A DNA stretch of 63,678 nt, filler included, from Octopus bimaculoides (lineage: Eukaryota), in NCBI RefSeq assembly GCF_001194135.2. It is 8 parts of 7 records of this genome, joined end to end, with 100 filler letters (N's around TTAATTAATTAA, not from the genome) between each part and the next. Parts side by side here need not be neighbours in the genome. Positions count along the whole stretch, not along the records: positions 31,560 to 55,009 come from NC_069010.1; 7 more parts are not named here. One strand, given 5' to 3'. The notes beneath the pieces were generated by a model. That model did no database searches. It worked only from the letters and a program-made list of their open reading frames with translations, and was not told where the DNA came from. Made by a program: the position numbers and the translations under genes. Positions 32,851 through 39,100 of the stretch are shown piece after piece (position 1 is the first letter of the stretch; each line of letters starts with the position of its first letter).

Positions 32851-33111
32851 ATACACACACACACACACATAGTAATCTTTTCTTTTTCTACTTGTTTTTT
32901 TCAGTGTGACCCCTGACTGACCAGAAGCAGGCCTGCCTCCAACCAGTCCAATCCAGTCCAGACAAGACATCTGAACAATCCTTTTATTTATTAATCTATT
33001 TATCTGTCTATTTACCCGCCCGCTTAAATATCTACATTTATATTTATCTATATATCTATATTTATCTACATTCTATATATACATATATATATATATACAT
33101 ATATCTACCCA

Positions 33112-36100
33112 ATGGCTGTACAATTCTCAAACAGGACCCTATTGTCCACCACTGACCAAAACAACCACCGATACTGGGCCGAGTTTGAATACAAACCAGT
33201 GAAGGAAGGAAGCAGCATGTACGTCTTCAAGGGTCGACTCAACGGCGATGGCCCCAGATCGGGAGAATACTGTGCTGTTAAGATGTTCCGCAAGTTCGTT
33301 GCGGAACCCTCCGACTGGAACCAATATGTGGCAAAGGCAAACATGGTGAACATCTTGGCGGAGAAATTCAACAACAAGCTGAAAGGCCAGTATAAAGTAC
33401 AGTTCTTGATTCCGATTTTGGCACACCTTGACACGGTATCTACCTGTACCGGTTGTCTTTACTGGTGCTCTGACATCAAGGCCATCGACACAGACGATTG
33501 CGTGGTCATTGAACCGTATTTACGCCACGGTTTTCGAAAGTTTTATCGCAACAGTCCATTAAAAGGGGCTGAAAATGCTTACATCTTGCAGGCCTTTAGT
33601 CATTTTACTGCTTGTGAAACTTGCGATACCTTGGTCTGTGGCCTCCAAGGTATCGCACACGAGAACGAGTTCAAACTGACCAATCCCATCATACACTCGT
33701 CTGACAAGCAGTGGGGGTCAACGGATAGAGGTCGGTCGGGCATAAAGAGTTTTTTTAGGAATCACTCGTGCAATCGGATCTGTAAAACTTTGAACTTGCC
33801 GTTTCTGCTGGAGACGAATGAAATCAACGACAGCGTGTCGACGATAAATAACGGTGAAGACGAAGAGGCCGCGGAAGAGGATGACGTGAAAAATTCCGGT
33901 GAAACGAGGAAAACGAAAATGAGAGACGCAAACGTTGGGACCGATTCTGATAACTTTGGTGAAGAGACACTCGTGAAAGAATTAGCTGAAACAACGAAAA
34001 AAGATAACGAGAGTGATGGTAATGACAGAGAAGGGAAACAAGATCAAGAGGATGAGGGCAAGGAAGATAAAAAGGCTGTGGGTGGGAAGAAATTGGATGA
34101 GAACACTGAAGAAGATGCAGAACATAAGGAAGAAGGGATAGACGCGAATGTGGAAAAGAAGCCAGGGGAAATTGCTGAAAAGAGCAGGGAAAAGAAGGCA
34201 GAGAGCAAAATTGATAAAAGTGTGGAAACTGAGCCATTTAACAAGGTGGAAGACCTGGCTGATTTTGGTGGAAGAAATGAATCTGTGATGGGTGAGAAAA
34301 ACCTCCCGGTTGTAAACGAGGGAGTCCAGGCCACTGTAAATGCACGAGTTGAGCCCAGTGTTAGTCCAAGAATAACAGCTGGGGTGTTTGTGGAACAGGG
34401 CCCTCTTTTAAGGGTGGAAAGTGAACCCGGCATGTATCTGGAAGAGGGCCCATCAGTAAGCGCCGCCGACGGAATTGGTAAAAGTGTGGAAGTAGATACA
34501 AATAAAGTTGATGAAATTGTACAGAAGAATCTCGAGTCTGTTGGAAGCGTTACTGAGTTGGATGTTAGAACTGACGGGGAATCAGCTTCCTATGTAGCTG
34601 GTACCCCTTTGAAAGTAACCCGAGGACATACTGGAGCAGCGTCGACACCAAGCAATGAAATCACTGTGATATCTGGATCTTTTGATGAGAGCTTTAAGAG
34701 GAGTCCAACGTCTGACGGCCATGACCATCCCTACAGTAGCGATAGCAGCATCAACGAAATCAACTACAACGATTTCGGTGCTGATAAGAAACCGTCGGAA
34801 CCCATTGCGGTTGCAGGAGGAGAAACGAGTTTCTATGGCAAACACAATTTGGTACCAAATTACGAGGACGAGGAGAATGACGATATGGGAATGGATTCAG
34901 GGCCACCACATCACCGAGATGAAATTTACTTGCCGCCAAAGATTCTGCAGACGCCACCCAGCAACCGCACTGGGCGAATATTCGTGGTTCCAGTCTGCCG
35001 ACAGACGGGTTCCGTGAGGAGTGCTACAAGTTCTGCTTCAGTGACGCCACCGGTTCTCTTAGAAACAGTCAGCCTAATCTGTCGGTGCCCAGCAAGTTTC
35101 CAGCCCATAGCCAGCAGCGACGATGTCGGTATTGGCGTTGGAAATAGCCCCAGTAGCAGGACCACCTCTCCTCTTCCACCTCTCTCTCCTATAAGTACAG
35201 ATGAAATGAAAACAGATGGATGGTCGGAGCAGAGTTCAGATTTGGGCCCATCCACAGCAGCCAAGGATCACCCTAATCCCCCATTGCCCTTATTTTCATC
35301 AACTCCTACTCCTGTTGAACCGCCTCCCCTTCTTTCTCCTCCTCCCGCTGAATTACCTCCCCTTCCTCCTACCCCTCATCCTGCTGCCACTGCTAGGAAC
35401 AGCATCACCACCCCACCGTCACCTTCAACAATGGCATCGACGTCAGCTTTGCCCAGGTGCTTGAGGCAACTGACCAGCTGCTGCTCGCTGCGCATGTCAA
35501 AGAAGAAGAAGAAGAAGAAGAAAAAGGAGAAAGACGAGAGCCCTGGGTCAGCGACAGATCCTGTCCCGCTGTCACAGACTTCGGAAACCGAGGTGCCAGT
35601 GGAAACTTCCAGTTCCAAAAGCAGCGGGAAAAGACGGAGCAGGAGTTGGCGTACGGCATGGCGCAGTCCGAAAACAAGCGGAACTTGTAGCACGTCCGAC
35701 ACAGAGGCATCCAGTCCAAAGAAGCCTGCCATGGTGTCGATCGAAATGAGTGCCCCAGAGGAGGGTGACGGCACCGTTTGTCCGAAGAACCCGTTCCAAA
35801 TGGTAACAGATGGCCGCGACGAAGAAAACAATCGCAACAACAACAACAACGATGACGATTATTACGTCAACGCTTACATCAACAACAATAATAATAATAT
35901 TAATAATAATGACACTAGTGGTGTTGCTGGGAGTGATGGTCAGTGTTATATTAACAACAACCGCGACCAAAACCACACCCATCAGATGGTTTTACAAAAG
36001 GCTTTTGTGGAAAAGGGGCAGCGGTTTACCTCGCCCCCACCACTGCTTCTTGACTCTGGACAGCCAGAGAGTAGTACCTATTGGGAGTACCACTGTATGA

Positions 36101-39100
36101 ATCCAGACGAAAGAGGAGCTGTTGGTGGCGGTGTTGGTGGTTGTAGATGCTGTGGTGGTGCAGGTGGTAGCTGTAGTTGTTGTGGTAGCAGTGGCGAAAG
36201 GGATTTTCCTCGGACGGTTTCCGATAACAGGACGCCACCACAGCTGGAAACGAGCATGAATGGCAGCAGTATCTCCATGACAACAGCAGACACTGATGCT
36301 GGCGCCGGTGAACCAAATCATCATGAGTACGACACGCTTCCAAGACGGACTTTCGATATGGGTTTCGAGCCAAACCGTGGCGGTATCTGCGATACATTAC
36401 CATGCAGGGGGGACCTTTTCACCGTCGAAGTCCACTACAATGGTGAAGCTGTTACAGACTATAGGTCTGACCCAGCTGCAGCAATGTCGACGATGACAAC
36501 AGCGGTGATGACGCCGCCAAAACTAGAAGCAATGACAGTAGCAACGACATCTGCAATGCCATTGTCATCGTCTTTGACAGAAATCATAGAAATGGTGCCG
36601 AAGGACAGCATCGCAGACGTCGATCCAAGGTTACCTGCTGACGGATGCCCGCCACAGATGCATGACCGTGAGAGCGGTAGCGGTCAGACCCTTTCTGGAT
36701 CTGAAACGACGGGTGTAACGACAGCAGGCGGAGTAGGAAGCGTTGGCGTTGCATTACGAGCAGAAGAGAATGATGAGGAGGAGGCGGTGGCAAAAGAAGA
36801 AGTATCAATAGTATCACCCTCCTTGGGATCAACCTCACAAACTGCCGGAGGAGCAATAACAGCAGCAGAAACAATGGAGTTAACTCAAGCTGATAGAATA
36901 CCAACATCTTCACAGTCACCATTCTTAAAATCTTCGGTAAACACTCTTAATTCTGGAACCCCAGACACCGAAGGAACAGCTTCTGTGTTTTCAGGGTCAG
37001 TTCAAACAGGTACCGACAACGCTAGTGACGGTGCCTCGACGGCTGGTGTCAAACCCATCACACCAAAATGCTATGACGATGTTGCGTCATCACTCGCCAC
37101 TACACCAACACCGTTGTCGTCATCATCATCATCATCGTCGTCTTCTTCATCGACGTTATTGTTATTGCCCGGTAGAGGAACGTTACAAAAAGCTCGGACA
37201 GAAGTAATGGAGAAGATCTCAACGTCAACAGACGATCGTTCATCAGAGTGTCCGAGGTTGGACATTCCGAACATTCCACTTTTGCTTTCAGAAGATGTCG
37301 ATGGTGATGGTGGTGATGGTGGTGACGGTGATGGAAAAACTGTTGCTGGTGGTGCCGAAGATACTGCTGACATACCATATATTGATGAATGCGATTCAGA
37401 TGACAGTGTGCAACAACAACAGCAACAGCAACAACAACGTGAACAAGATGAGCAAAGTTCTGGCAAGGCACGAATCGATAGTTACGCCCTTGATCATCAC
37501 GTATGTAAACATCAACAGCAGTCTCTTGTGGTACCTTCCAGTGACATATGCAGTGAAGATCAGCAACAACAACAACAACACCAACAATCGCTTGAGGTAC
37601 CTTTTAATGATGCATACGGTGAAGAACAGCAAAAGCACCGACAATTCCTCGAGGTACCTTACAGCGACATAGATAGCGAGCAACAGCAATCTGAAGTACC
37701 TGTTGATGTGTGTTGGCAAGAAAAGCAACAACAATATGAGGTACCTGTCAGTGATACATATGAACAACAGCAAGACAAAGAATCTGAGGTACCTGTTCAT
37801 ATCTATGGTCAGGAACAGCAACATGAGTTGCCTGTTAGTGGCACATTTGGTCAACAACCACAGCAGCAATGCCAGCCATCTGAGGTACCTTTTAGTGACA
37901 TACATGGTCAGGATCAGCAGCAACAAACTGTGGTACTTTCTAGTGACATATATAGTCAACAACAAACTGAGGTACCTTCTAGTGACATATACAGTCAACA
38001 ACAAACTGAGGTACCTTCTAGTGGCATATGTAGTCAACAACAAACTGAGGCACCTTCTAGTGACATATATAGTCAACAACAAACTGAGGTACCTTCTAGT
38101 GATATATATAGTCGACAACAAACTGAGGTACCGTCTAGTGGCATATACAGTCAACAACAAACTGAGGTACCTTCTAGTGACATATACAGTCAACAACAAA
38201 CTGAAGTGCCTTCTAGTGACATATATAGTCGCCAACAAACTGAGGTACCTTCTAGTGAAATATATAGTCAACAACAAACTGAGGTACCTTCTAGTGAAAT
38301 ATATAGTCAACAGCAAACTGAGGTACCACCTACTGATGTACATGGGCAACAACACTATCATCAATCTGAGGTACCTTCCAGTAATATATATAGTCGGGAA
38401 CAAAATCAACAAGCTGAGGTACCATCTACTGACATATATGGCCAACAACAGCAATATCAACAATCTGGGGTACCTTCTACTGACATATATGGTCAACAGC
38501 AACAACATCAGCAATTTGAGGTACCCTCTACTGACATATATGGTCAGCAAGAATATCAACAATCTGAAGTACCTTCTAGTGAAATATATAGTGAACAATC
38601 TAAGGTACCTTCTACCAACATATATGACCAACAACAGTATCAACCATCTGAGGTACCTTCTGCTGACATACATAGTCAACAACAGCAGTTTGAGGTACCC
38701 TCTACTGATATATATGGTCAACAACAGTACCAACAAACTGAGGAACCATCTAGCAATATATATAGTCAACAACAGCAATTTGAGGTACCCTCTAGCGATA
38801 TATATTGTCAACAACAACAATCTCAGATACCTTCTAGTGACATATATAGTCAGCAACAACAACAAACTGGGGTACCTTCTAGCAACATATATAGTCAACG
38901 ACAGCAATTTGAGGTACCCTCTACTGACGTATTTGGTCAACCTCAGTACCAACAAACTGAGAGACCTTCTGACATATATGATCAACAACATCAACCATCT
39001 GAGGTACCATCTACTAACATGTATAGTCAGCAACAGCAATTTGAGGTACCCTCTACTGATGTATATCGTCAACAACAATATCAGCAATCTGAGGTACCTT

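What the first reader, a model, noticed from the sequence alone, without database searches (positions are those of the whole stretch)
33172..33800. Alpha-kinase domain with both catalytic aspartates replaced, heading a ~3,000-aa intronless protein
Seen: the canonical D(L/I)QG reads CGLQG (G177, GGC at 33640) and LTDP reads LTNP (N191, AAT at 33682); each is one base from an Asp codon. The VAVK-type Lys (K57), hinge Glu, QAFSHFT, Gly-rich loop and Zn ligands (H164, H218, C220, C224) are kept. Established: these Asp residues (MHCK-A D756/D766; TRPM7 D1765/D1775) are needed for catalysis and metal binding. Inference: the fold is preserved and the catalytic residues lost in a 9.5-kb stop-free ORF, which suggests a selected alpha-pseudokinase scaffold. 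The architecture (kinase at the N-terminus, ~2,900-aa disordered tail) differs from eEF2K, ALPK1-3, TRPM6/7 and MHCK.
Basis: partly seen in the sequence, partly recalled or inferred. Interest (0 to 1): 0.8.

Follow-up and report, generated by a model that had tools for sequence, protein, structure and literature searches.

The report
Octopus giant protein with dead alpha-kinase
An octopus gene encodes a 3,163-residue protein that starts with a well-folded alpha-kinase domain lacking both catalytic aspartates; the change is real, conserved and under strong selection, and it belongs to a large, apparently undescribed group of such "dead" alpha-kinases in molluscs.

Summary
ORF 33112-42603 (+) encodes 3,163 aa. 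Residues 32-224 match Pfam Alpha_kinase (E 6.5e-29), and an AlphaFold model (pLDDT 92) matches only solved alpha-kinases. G177 (GGC, 33640) and N191 (AAT, 33682) align with MHCK-A D756 and D766. The P-loop Arg is also lost (M36). Lys57, Glu134, Gln179, the Gly-rich loop and the four Zn ligands are kept.

The substitutions are not errors. DNA contigs from four runs and RNA contigs from four runs agree with the window. Octopus sinensis (98% identical) and a 55%-identical 1,530-aa homologue have the same Gly/Asn, encoded by different synonymous codons. Kinase-domain dN/dS against O. sinensis is 0.027; the tail averages about 0.24.

- The coding sequence is a single exon, but the gene has a spliced 5' leader (acceptor at 32904/32905), and the ORF contains a 198-N scaffolding gap.
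- This is not a one-off. Among the 150 closest family representatives, 57 lack both Asp, and every one I looked up is a mollusc. ALPK3 is already published as an alpha-pseudokinase, although it keeps both Asp.

Most likely this is a non-catalytic, zinc-stabilised binding module on a long acidic, S/Q-rich repetitive scaffold. Loss of activity is inferred, not measured.

The parts
32905..33111 (+). 5' UTR part of the large exon. The splice acceptor ttttttcAG lies at 32903-32904. The upstream leader exon is outside the piece.
   Evidence: An RNA contig of run X2 matches 32903-33070, then continues upstream with 119 nt that do not occur anywhere in the window. Three in-frame stops and no ATG lie between 32905 and 33112.
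33112..42603 (+). Single-exon coding sequence of 3,163 aa, including 66 codons of N.
   Evidence: ORF list and translation. RNA contigs tile 33075-37900, 39850-40747 and 41029-42699 collinearly, with no consistent GT-AG joint. The O. sinensis orthologue has one uninterrupted ORF of 3,386 codons.
33112..33807 (+). Alpha-kinase-fold domain (aa 1-232; Pfam match aa 32-224 = 33205-33783).
   Evidence: Pfam E=6.5e-29. AlphaFold2 pLDDT 92.4, pTM 0.88. The top 40 Foldseek PDB hits are all alpha-kinases, TM 0.56-0.71. dN/dS 0.027 against O. sinensis.
33217..33219 (+). Met36, in place of the P-loop Arg (MHCK-A GALREAY).
   Evidence: Profile alignment to MHCK-A and EhAK1. This column is Arg in 42 of the 53 Asp/Asp relatives with a residue there, and never Arg in relatives lacking both Asp.
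33280..33282 (+). Lys57 (the ATP-phosphate lysine, VAVK/CAVK motif), retained.
   Evidence: Aligns with the Lys of MHCK-A FVLKLYK. Lys in 112 of 129 aligned relatives.
33640..33642 (+). Gly177 (GGC), in place of the catalytic Asp (MHCK-A D756, TRPM7 D1765).
   Evidence: Alignments. Codon check: GGC here, GGT in O. sinensis and in P0002. No variant in DNA or RNA contigs.
33646..33648 (+). Gln179 (the metal-binding Gln of D-x-Q-G), retained.
33682..33684 (+). Asn191 (AAT), in place of the metal-binding Asp (MHCK-A D766, TRPM7 D1775).
   Evidence: Alignments. Codon check: AAT here and in O. sinensis, AAC in P0002. No A>G in the RNA contigs of four runs.
33601..33783 (+). Zinc module: H164 (33601-33603), H218 (33763-33765), C220 (33769-33771), C224 (33781-33783). 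Includes the Gly-rich loop G202-G210.
   Evidence: These columns are invariant or nearly invariant in the 150 relatives (H 148/148, H 141/143, C 142/143, C 143/143 of aligned residues).
34936..35052 (+). Conserved short linear motif in the tail (aa 609-647, ILQTPPxxxxGRxxVxPV).
   Evidence: Shared collinearly with the 55%-identical homologue P0002, aa 299-334.
37882..39858 (+). Tandem array of 13-16-aa units (QQQ-x-EVPS[ST]DIY-[SG]); 37 strict matches to the EVPSxDIY pattern.
   Evidence: Tandem Repeats Finder gives periods of 39, 48, 90 and 138 nt over 37921-39858. Motif count, aa 1591-2231.
40790..40987 (.). Assembly gap (198 N) inside the ORF, at a (GGT)n run.
   Evidence: The last 63 nt before the gap recur 6 nt after it. 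No contig bridges it. O. sinensis is continuous at this place.
42103..42147 (+). Conserved C-terminal motif (aa 2998-3012, YIExxxSIEIxFRIN).
   Evidence: Collinear match to P0002 aa 1387-1402. The last ~160 codons have dN/dS 0.13.
42604..42699 (+). Start of the 3' UTR.
   Evidence: RNA contigs run through the stop codon to 42699, where they break at a simple repeat.

Best explanation
The window carries a transcribed octopus gene. After a spliced non-coding leader, one 9.5-kb exon encodes a 3,163-aa protein.

The first ~232 residues fold as an alpha-kinase domain that has lost three residues of the phosphotransfer machinery: the catalytic Asp (now Gly177), the metal-binding Asp (now Asn191) and the P-loop Arg (now Met36). 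It keeps the zinc module, the hinge Glu, Lys57, Gln179 and the Gly-rich loop.

The domain is therefore most likely a pseudokinase. I read it as a stable, zinc-stabilised module whose former active-site cleft now binds something (a nucleotide, a peptide or a partner kinase) without transferring phosphate.

It is tethered to a ~2,900-aa acidic, Ser/Gln/Glu/Pro-rich, largely unstructured tail. The tail carries a long EVPSxDIY-QQQ repeat array and a few conserved short motifs, so the whole protein would act as a multivalent scaffold.

Shown: fold, substitutions, their fixation and conservation, purifying selection, transcription, single coding exon.
Inferred: lack of catalysis, ligand binding by the cleft, scaffold role of the tail.
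For: Domain and fold
- Pfam Alpha_kinase E=6.5e-29 over the whole profile.
- AlphaFold2 pLDDT 92.4. The best 40 structural matches are all alpha-kinases.

Lost residues
- G177 aligns with D756 and N191 with D766 of MHCK-A; M36 aligns with the P-loop Arg.
- PDB entries 4zs4 (D756A) and 3lmi (D766A) are titled 'inactive' alpha-kinase domain, and both were crystallised with ATP.
- The review PMC2827801 calls the Lys and both Asp invariant key catalytic residues.

Not an error or a private mutation
- The sequence is identical in DNA contigs of 4 runs from 3 studies and in RNA contigs of 4 runs.
- O. sinensis XP_036370910.1 and the 55%-identical P0002 both have CGLQG / LTNP.
- Codons differ synonymously: GGC vs GGT, AAT vs AAC.

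Selection
- Against O. sinensis the domain shows 33 synonymous and 4 non-synonymous differences, dN/dS 0.027. The tail ranges from 0.13 to 0.51.
- The cleft segment aa 147-196 is 82% identical to P0002, against 44-50% for the rest of the domain. The former active site is therefore the most constrained part.

Family context
- Of 145 relatives with both positions aligned, 74 are Asp/Asp, 57 lack both, and 14 lack only one.
- Those lacking both never have the P-loop Arg, and more than half have lost Gln179 as well. All still keep the Zn ligands.

Tail
- No Pfam domain and no hydrophobic segment.
- 53% of residues are of disorder-promoting types; acidic 14.9% against basic 6.6%.
- The C-terminal 204 aa give pLDDT 39.7.
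- Short motifs are collinear with P0002.

Transcription
- A spliced leader and RNA contigs along the ORF.
Against: - No activity or ATP-binding measurement exists. Several proteins once called pseudokinases from sequence later proved to be active by unusual mechanisms.
- Lys57, Gln179 and Asn191 could still hold a nucleotide and metal, so a weak or altered chemistry cannot be excluded.
- Only assembled contigs were available, not raw reads. Low-level A-to-I editing of AAT (Asn191) to GAT (Asp) cannot be excluded, although Gly177 (GGC) cannot be turned into Asp by A-to-I editing.
- The disorder of the tail rests on composition, absence of domain hits and one single-sequence model.
- The species of P0002 is unknown, so it may be a paralogue rather than an orthologue.
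- RNA coverage of the repeat array (37900-39850) and of the gap was not tested.
Confidence: 0.72

Rival explanations
1. The domain is still an enzyme. It would use a non-canonical mechanism or substrate, for example a different general base, Asn191/Gln179 for metal binding, or a reaction other than protein phosphorylation. In that case 'pseudokinase' would be a misnomer.
For: - Lys57, Glu134, Gln179 and the Gly-rich loop are retained.
- The cleft segment is the most conserved part of the domain (82% identity to P0002). That fits any cleft-dependent function, catalysis included.
- dN/dS is 0.027.
Against: - Each single Asp-to-Ala mutant of MHCK-A is deposited as 'inactive' (4zs4, 3lmi). Here both Asp and the P-loop Arg are gone.
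- In relatives that lack both Asp, other nucleotide and metal ligands decay too (Gln179 kept in only 25 of 57, P-loop Arg in none). That is the pattern of relaxed catalytic constraint, not of an alternative catalytic set.
Confidence: 0.12
2. RNA editing restores the enzyme. A-to-I editing, which is common in cephalopods, would recode AAT (Asn191) to GAT (Asp) in some tissues and give a conditionally active kinase.
For: AAT to GAT is the kind of change A-to-I editing makes (sequence). Only contigs were available, and they drop minority variants.
Against: - RNA contigs of four runs carry A at 33682.
- The only A>G seen in the first 1.9 kb (34753) is also present in DNA runs, so it is a polymorphism.
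- Gly177 (GGC/GGT) cannot become Asp through A-to-I editing.
- P0002 uses AAC and keeps Asn.
Confidence: 0.04
3. Artefact or decaying gene. The substitutions would be assembly errors or a private mutation, or the long ORF would be kept open only by stop-poor repeats in a pseudogene.
For: - The assembly has a 198-N gap inside the ORF.
- The repeat array also gives long ORFs in other frames: 37703-40189 (+) 828 aa and 37396-39498 (-) 700 aa.
Against: - Independent DNA and RNA assemblies agree.
- The same residues occur in O. sinensis and P0002 with synonymous codon differences.
- dN/dS is 0.027 in the domain and 0.24 overall.
- A 3,386-codon uninterrupted ORF exists in a second species.
- The transcript is spliced and covers the ORF.
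Confidence: 0.02

Closest known systems
Octopus sinensis LOC115225996, XP_036370910.1 ('uncharacterized protein', 3,296 aa)
   Same: - Orthologue: 98% identical over the kinase domain, with the same CGLQG / LTNP.
- Same architecture and C-terminus.
- The locus aligns from about 470 nt upstream of the ATG to beyond the stop codon.
   Different: - A different species: dS is about 0.26.
- The repeat array differs in length.
- The RefSeq model is 90 aa shorter than the uninterrupted 3,386-codon ORF, and the differences lie inside the repeat array.
- It carries no functional annotation.
Molluscan and lophotrochozoan small N-terminal alpha-kinase proteins (auto-annotated 'alpha-protein kinase vwkA-like', 'alpha-protein kinase 1-like', 'eEF2 kinase-like')
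   Same: - The domain starts at residue 1, with the same M-A-x-x-x-S-N-x-T start.
- 30-40% identity.
- Many also lack both Asp. Named examples come from Haliotis, Aplysia, Biomphalaria, Nucella, Elysia, Mizuhopecten/Pecten, Pinctada, Potamilus and Sinanodonta.
   Different: - Most of the 150 relatives are 200-500 aa and little more than the domain. Here a ~2,900-aa tail follows.
- The nearest small relative (P0003, 234 aa, 40% identity) keeps both Asp.
[quoted passage not shown]
   Same: An alpha-kinase fold regarded as non-catalytic, in a very long and largely disordered protein, with a proposed scaffolding role.
   Different: - ALPK3 keeps both Asp (D1774, D1784). It deviates at four other cleft positions that are conserved in the other alpha-kinases (given in the paper as G1725, K1729, Q1769, N1797).
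- Its kinase domain is C-terminal and is preceded by Ig domains.
- It has 14 exons.
- Nothing indicates orthology. The window protein has no Ig domain hit, and its closest relatives are molluscan.
Dictyostelium MHCK-A, Entamoeba EhAK1, eEF2K, TRPM7 and ALPK1 kinase domains (solved structures)
   Same: Same fold (TM 0.56-0.71), zinc module, Lys, hinge Glu, Gln and Gly-rich loop.
   Different: - All of these have both Asp and are active enzymes.
- They have other accessory domains (WD40, SEL1-like repeats, channel) that are absent here.

Membership tests
Alpha-kinase domain family (Pfam PF02816) | Significant match to the family profile over its full length | tested here: met
   E=6.5e-29, 101.8 bits (cut-off 21.3), profile positions 2-185 of 185.
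Alpha-kinase domain family (Pfam PF02816) | Alpha-kinase three-dimensional fold | tested here: met
   AlphaFold2 pLDDT 92.4, pTM 0.88. The top 40 Foldseek PDB hits are all alpha-kinases, E down to 1e-14, TM 0.56-0.71. This is a prediction, not a solved structure.
Alpha-kinase domain family (Pfam PF02816) | C-lobe zinc module (His, His, Cys, Cys) | tested here: met
   H164, H218, C220 and C224 sit in the invariant columns.
Alpha-kinase domain family (Pfam PF02816) | Invariant ATP-binding Lys and hinge Glu | tested here: met
   K57 and E134.
Active alpha-kinases (enzymes) | Catalytic Asp of D-x-Q-G (MHCK-A D756 / TRPM7 D1765) | tested here: not met
   Gly177, codon GGC at 33640.
Active alpha-kinases (enzymes) | Metal-binding Asp of T-D-P (MHCK-A D766 / TRPM7 D1775) | tested here: not met
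   Asn191, codon AAT at 33682.
Active alpha-kinases (enzymes) | P-loop Arg that contacts the ATP phosphates | tested here: not met
   Met36 aligns with the Arg of MHCK-A GALREAY. The role of this Arg is from my own knowledge of the MHCK-A and TRPM7 structures.
Active alpha-kinases (enzymes) | Measured phosphotransfer activity | not testable with these tools
   Needs recombinant protein.
Pseudokinase (general definition) | Kinase fold lacking one or more catalytic residues, yet kept by purifying selection | tested here: met
   Three residues are lost. dN/dS is 0.027. The residues are conserved in two homologues with synonymous codon turnover.
Pseudokinase (general definition) | Demonstrated absence of catalysis | not testable with these tools
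   Inference only, from the MHCK-A D756A and D766A 'inactive' entries.
ALPK3 orthologue | Ig-like domains with a C-terminal alpha-kinase domain, and the ALPK3-specific cleft substitutions | tested here: not met
   The kinase domain is N-terminal and the tail gives no Ig hit. ALPK3 keeps both Asp.
vwkA (von Willebrand factor A kinase) | N-terminal vWFA domain with a C-terminal alpha-kinase domain | tested here: not met
   No VWA hit, and the domain order is reversed. Architecture taken from PMC2827801.
eEF2 kinase | Calmodulin-binding N-terminus and C-terminal SEL1-like repeats | tested here: not met
   No Sel1 or other repeat-domain hit in the tail. eEF2K is only a distant structural match.

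The most novel reading that the evidence does not exclude
Molluscs may harbour an old, large and so far undescribed radiation of alpha-kinase-fold proteins that gave up phosphotransfer and re-used the zinc-stabilised cleft as a ligand- or partner-binding site. In the sample here, 57 of 145 cluster representatives lack both Asp.

In cephalopods, one lineage fused this module to a multi-thousand-residue repeat scaffold. It may pair with the small Asp-containing paralogues as a pseudokinase/kinase couple, or it may have a new chemistry.
Probability: 0.3. Interest if true: 0.7.

Novelty: new variant of a known kind. Interest (0 to 1): 0.5.

Why it matters
Alpha-kinases are a small atypical kinase family. 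Only one member, vertebrate ALPK3, has been argued to be a pseudokinase, and it keeps both catalytic aspartates.

This locus shows a cleaner case. Both Asp and the P-loop Arg are gone, yet the domain evolves under very strong constraint, and the former active-site cleft is its most conserved part. The case also turns out to belong to a broad molluscan set of similarly degenerate domains, which automatic annotation labels as kinases ('vwkA-like', 'eEF2K-like').

If confirmed experimentally, this would:
- give a natural series for asking what an alpha-kinase fold does when it no longer phosphorylates;
- correct the kinome counts of molluscs;
- add a giant, single-coding-exon, repeat-rich scaffold protein to cephalopod biology.

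The gene itself is already in public databases as an uncharacterised protein, so the novelty lies in the interpretation, not in the sequence.

Tried and rejected
1. The word-indexed protein search with the window domain found nothing. With P0002 as query it found only two distant hits. The exhaustive HMMER search was what worked.
I used shorter stretches instead.
No paper cites the accession numbers. There is no nucleotide similarity to the window. This stays unresolved.
4. RNA editing at the two codons: only assembled contigs exist for these runs, so fractions cannot be measured. The one A>G found (34753) is a DNA polymorphism.
5. The many 'joints' are not introns. They connect short low-complexity words (AAC/CAA and GGT runs), lack consistent GT-AG ends, and also occur in a DNA run.
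6. A hidden folded domain in the tail: Pfam found nothing above threshold, and the weak MsddA-like and Nucleoporin_FG hits are below their cut-offs and lie in Q-rich repeats. The C-terminal 204 aa modelled poorly.
7. The literature search for a description of Asp-less molluscan alpha-kinases found none in the held library. The oyster kinome paper only lists 'alpha' among atypical kinases.
8. The NJ tree is rough and has no support values. I use it only to say that the Asp/Asp and degenerate sequences largely separate.
Full report
**What is there.** The piece 31560-55009 contains one dominant feature, an ORF on the + strand from 33112 to 42603 encoding 3,163 aa.
- A stop lies 24 codons upstream of the ATG in the same frame. 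There is no ATG or AG dinucleotide between that stop and the ATG, so 33112 is the start codon.
- The ORF contains 198 N (40790-40987). The 63 nt before the gap recur 6 nt after it, inside a (GGT)n run, so this is a scaffolding artefact and not missing coding sequence.
- The orthologous locus of Octopus sinensis has no N and one uninterrupted ORF of 3,386 codons.

**Checking the observation.** Residues 32-224 match Pfam Alpha_kinase (PF02816) over the whole profile, with E=6.5e-29 and 101.8 bits against a cut-off of 21.3.
- Sequence searches of the PDB align CGLQG with V-D-I-Q-G of MHCK-A and C-D-I-Q-G of Entamoeba EhAK1. They align LTNP with Y-T-D-P and L-T-D-P of the same proteins.
Each is one base from an Asp codon.
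- K57, E134, H164, Q179, G202/D205/G207/G210, H218, C220 and C224 occupy columns that are invariant or nearly so in the family.
The P-loop Arg (MHCK-A G-A-L-R-E-A-Y) is Met36 here (G-S-S-M-Y-V-F).
- An AlphaFold2 model of aa 1-243, built on a 66-sequence alignment, has pLDDT 92.4 and pTM 0.88. Its 40 best Foldseek matches in the PDB are all alpha-kinase domains (MHCK-A, EhAK1, eEF2K, TRPM7, ALPK1; TM 0.56-0.71). Ordinary protein kinases follow only at E>1e-3.

**Are the substitutions real?** Logan contigs of four DNA runs from three studies, and of four RNA runs, cover 33080-35000 without any difference at 33640 or 33682.
- The only A>G in that stretch (34753) also appears in three DNA runs, so it is a polymorphism and not RNA editing.
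- Contigs hide minority variants, so low-level editing of AAT to GAT cannot be excluded. Gly177 (GGC) cannot become Asp by A-to-I editing in any case.

**Relatives.** The exhaustive HMMER search found 2,622 proteins at E<=1e-3.
- The best hit (98% identity, 3,296 aa) is XP_036370910.1, 'uncharacterized protein LOC115225996' of Octopus sinensis. The window therefore comes from another Octopus species; dS against O. sinensis is about 0.26.
- The second hit (P0002, 55% identity, 1,530 aa) comes from an unnamed ENA assembly. It is encoded there by a single ORF.
- P0002 has the same layout: the domain at residue 1, then an acidic, repeat-rich tail.
- It shares two short motifs collinearly with the window protein, at aa 609-647 and aa 2998-3012.
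- Both relatives read CGLQG and LTNP, with synonymous codon differences: GGC/GGT/GGT for Gly and AAT/AAT/AAC for Asn.
- The third hit (P0003, 234 aa, 40% identity) has Asp (GAC) at both positions.

**Selection.** Against O. sinensis the domain shows 33 synonymous and 4 non-synonymous differences, giving dN/dS 0.027.
- The tail ranges from 0.13 (last ~160 codons) to about 0.5. The whole ORF gives 0.24.
- Against P0002, the segment aa 147-196, which forms the former active-site cleft, is 82% identical. The rest of the domain is 44-50% identical.
- The cleft is thus the most constrained part, although its catalytic residues are gone.

**The family context changes the picture.** Among the 150 best cluster representatives, position 177 is Asp in 87, Gly in 33 and Asn in 23. 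Position 191 is Asp in 77, Asn in 22 and Thr in 20.
- The two positions go together: 74 are Asp/Asp, 57 lack both, and only 14 lack one.
- Proteins lacking both never have the P-loop Arg and keep Gln179 in only 25 of 57. All still keep the zinc ligands, the hinge Glu, G180 and D205.
- A rough neighbour-joining tree, built with these sites masked, places nearly all Asp/Asp sequences in one large clade. The degenerate ones fall in other clades, and the octopus lineage sits next to P0003.
- The named Asp-less members come from gastropods (Haliotis, Aplysia, Biomphalaria, Nucella, Elysia) and bivalves (Mizuhopecten, Pecten, Argopecten, Pinctada, Potamilus, Sinanodonta). They are auto-annotated as 'alpha-protein kinase vwkA-like', 'alpha-protein kinase 1-like', 'eEF2 kinase-like' or 'uncharacterized'.
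- Most are 200-500 aa, with the domain at residue 1. The N-terminal position of the domain is therefore normal for this family. The giant tail is the peculiarity.

**Gene structure and transcription.** RNA contigs tile 33075-37900, 39850-40747 and 41029-42699 collinearly with the genome.
- The contigs break only at low-complexity runs. The many 'joints' listed there connect such runs, lack consistent GT-AG ends, and also occur in a DNA run. I do not read them as introns.
- Upstream, a 320-nt RNA contig of run X2 matches 32903-33070 and then continues with 119 nt that occur nowhere in the window. The genome there reads ttttttcAG|TGTGACC.
- The gene therefore has a spliced non-coding leader, whose exon lies more than 1.3 kb upstream and outside the piece. 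The coding sequence is a single exon.
- The repeat array (37900-39850) and the gap were not covered by my read tests.

**The tail.**
- Composition: S 13.2%, Q 9.6%, E 7.8%, G 7.6%, P 7.3%, D 7.1%. Acidic residues are 14.9% and basic 6.6%.
- No hydrophobic segment would fit a membrane span. There are homopolymer runs of K, S, Q and G.
- Tandem Repeats Finder reports a 1.9-kb array (37921-39858) with units of 39-48 nt. It encodes 37 strict copies of EVPSxDIY between Q-rich spacers.
- Pfam finds no domain above threshold. A single-sequence model of the last 204 aa has pLDDT 39.7, with only two terminal helices.
- This fits intrinsic disorder with embedded short motifs, but the evidence is indirect.

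**How it most likely works.** PDB entries 4zs4 (MHCK-A D756A) and 3lmi (D766A) are titled as inactive alpha-kinase domains, and both are complexes with ATP. The review PMC2827801 calls the Lys and the two Asp invariant key catalytic residues.
- With both Asp and the P-loop Arg gone, phosphotransfer by the usual mechanism is very unlikely. Nucleotide binding may or may not persist.
- The strong constraint on the fold, and above all on the cleft, argues that the cleft still binds something.
- My best reading (confidence about 0.7) is a pseudokinase: a zinc-stabilised recognition module at the head of a long multivalent scaffold.
- A pairing with the small Asp-containing paralogues, as in other pseudokinase/kinase couples, is attractive but purely inferential.
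- Rivals are a non-canonical enzyme (about 0.12), restoration of Asp191 by editing (about 0.04), and artefact or pseudogene (about 0.02).

- ALPK3 keeps both Asp, differs at four other cleft residues, and has its kinase domain at the C-terminus after Ig domains. It is an analogue, not a relative.
- The labels vwkA, eEF2K and ALPK1 attached to the molluscan relatives are not supported as memberships here. No vWFA, SEL1 or other accessory domain is present.
- I found no paper in the held library describing the Asp-less molluscan alpha-kinases.

**Verdict.** The protein is already in databases as an uncharacterised protein, and alpha-pseudokinases have a precedent, so this is a new variant of a known kind. 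The added value is the strength of the evidence for selection and the finding that this protein belongs to a broad molluscan set of catalytically degenerate alpha-kinase domains. Interest 0.5.

Noticed in passing
window 40790-40987: A 198-N scaffold gap sits inside the coding sequence. Its flanks overlap by 63 nt at a (GGT)n run, so the peptide GGGGIGGGGGGGGVDFMENSMS appears twice. The true protein is probably about 90 aa shorter here than the translation suggests (66 gap codons plus one ~23-aa duplicated copy).
   Followed up: yes
window 32903-32905: A splice acceptor (ttttttcAG|TG) is used by an RNA contig. The 119 nt of leader upstream of it occur nowhere in the window, so at least one non-coding 5' exon lies beyond the piece.
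   Followed up: partly
window 34753, 35432, 36978, 40056, 40415 and others: Single-base differences between the window and RNA contigs. Three were also checked in DNA runs: 34753, 40056 and 40415. All three are present in DNA, so they are polymorphisms and not editing. The sites between 35000 and 37900 were compared with RNA only.
   Followed up: partly
window 37396-40189, both strands: Long ORFs in other frames (37703-40189 +, 828 aa; 37396-39498 -, 700 aa) overlap the repeat array. They are by-products of stop-poor CAA/GTA-rich repeats, not genes.
   Followed up: partly
window 42609: A 6-nt deletion just after the stop codon is seen in RNA contigs of two runs and in one DNA run. This is a 3' UTR length polymorphism.
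   Followed up: no
window 53820-54236 (+): A 138-aa ORF matches Pfam DUF4371 (E=5e-8, profile positions 81-198 of 237). From my own knowledge this domain is usually found in hAT-type transposase-like proteins. It is probably a transposon fragment.
   Followed up: partly
window 42736-43387, 43902-44855, 46879-47338, 48964-48973, 51735-51913: Five more N gaps, with TA/CA-rich simple repeats, lie downstream of the gene. The very low GC values in the composition profile there are largely an effect of the N runs.
   Followed up: partly
L002 3001-13158 (Octopus sinensis): The RefSeq protein model (3,296 aa) is 90 aa shorter than the uninterrupted 3,386-codon ORF at the locus. All differences lie inside the repeat array (aa 1731-2555 of the ORF), so the model probably removes pieces of the repeat array as introns.
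   Followed up: partly
P0176 (ENA assembly, 522 aa): A distant relative carries a papain-like peptidase domain (PF00112) together with an alpha-kinase domain. This is an unusual combination.
   Followed up: no
P0004 (Lingula anatina XP_013396847.1) and other family members, N-terminus: The family shares a conserved extreme N-terminus (M-[AG]-x-x-x-S-N-x-T). The Lingula protein starts MGAEQS, which looks like an N-myristoylation signal. The octopus protein starts MAVQFS and lacks the Gly.
   Followed up: no
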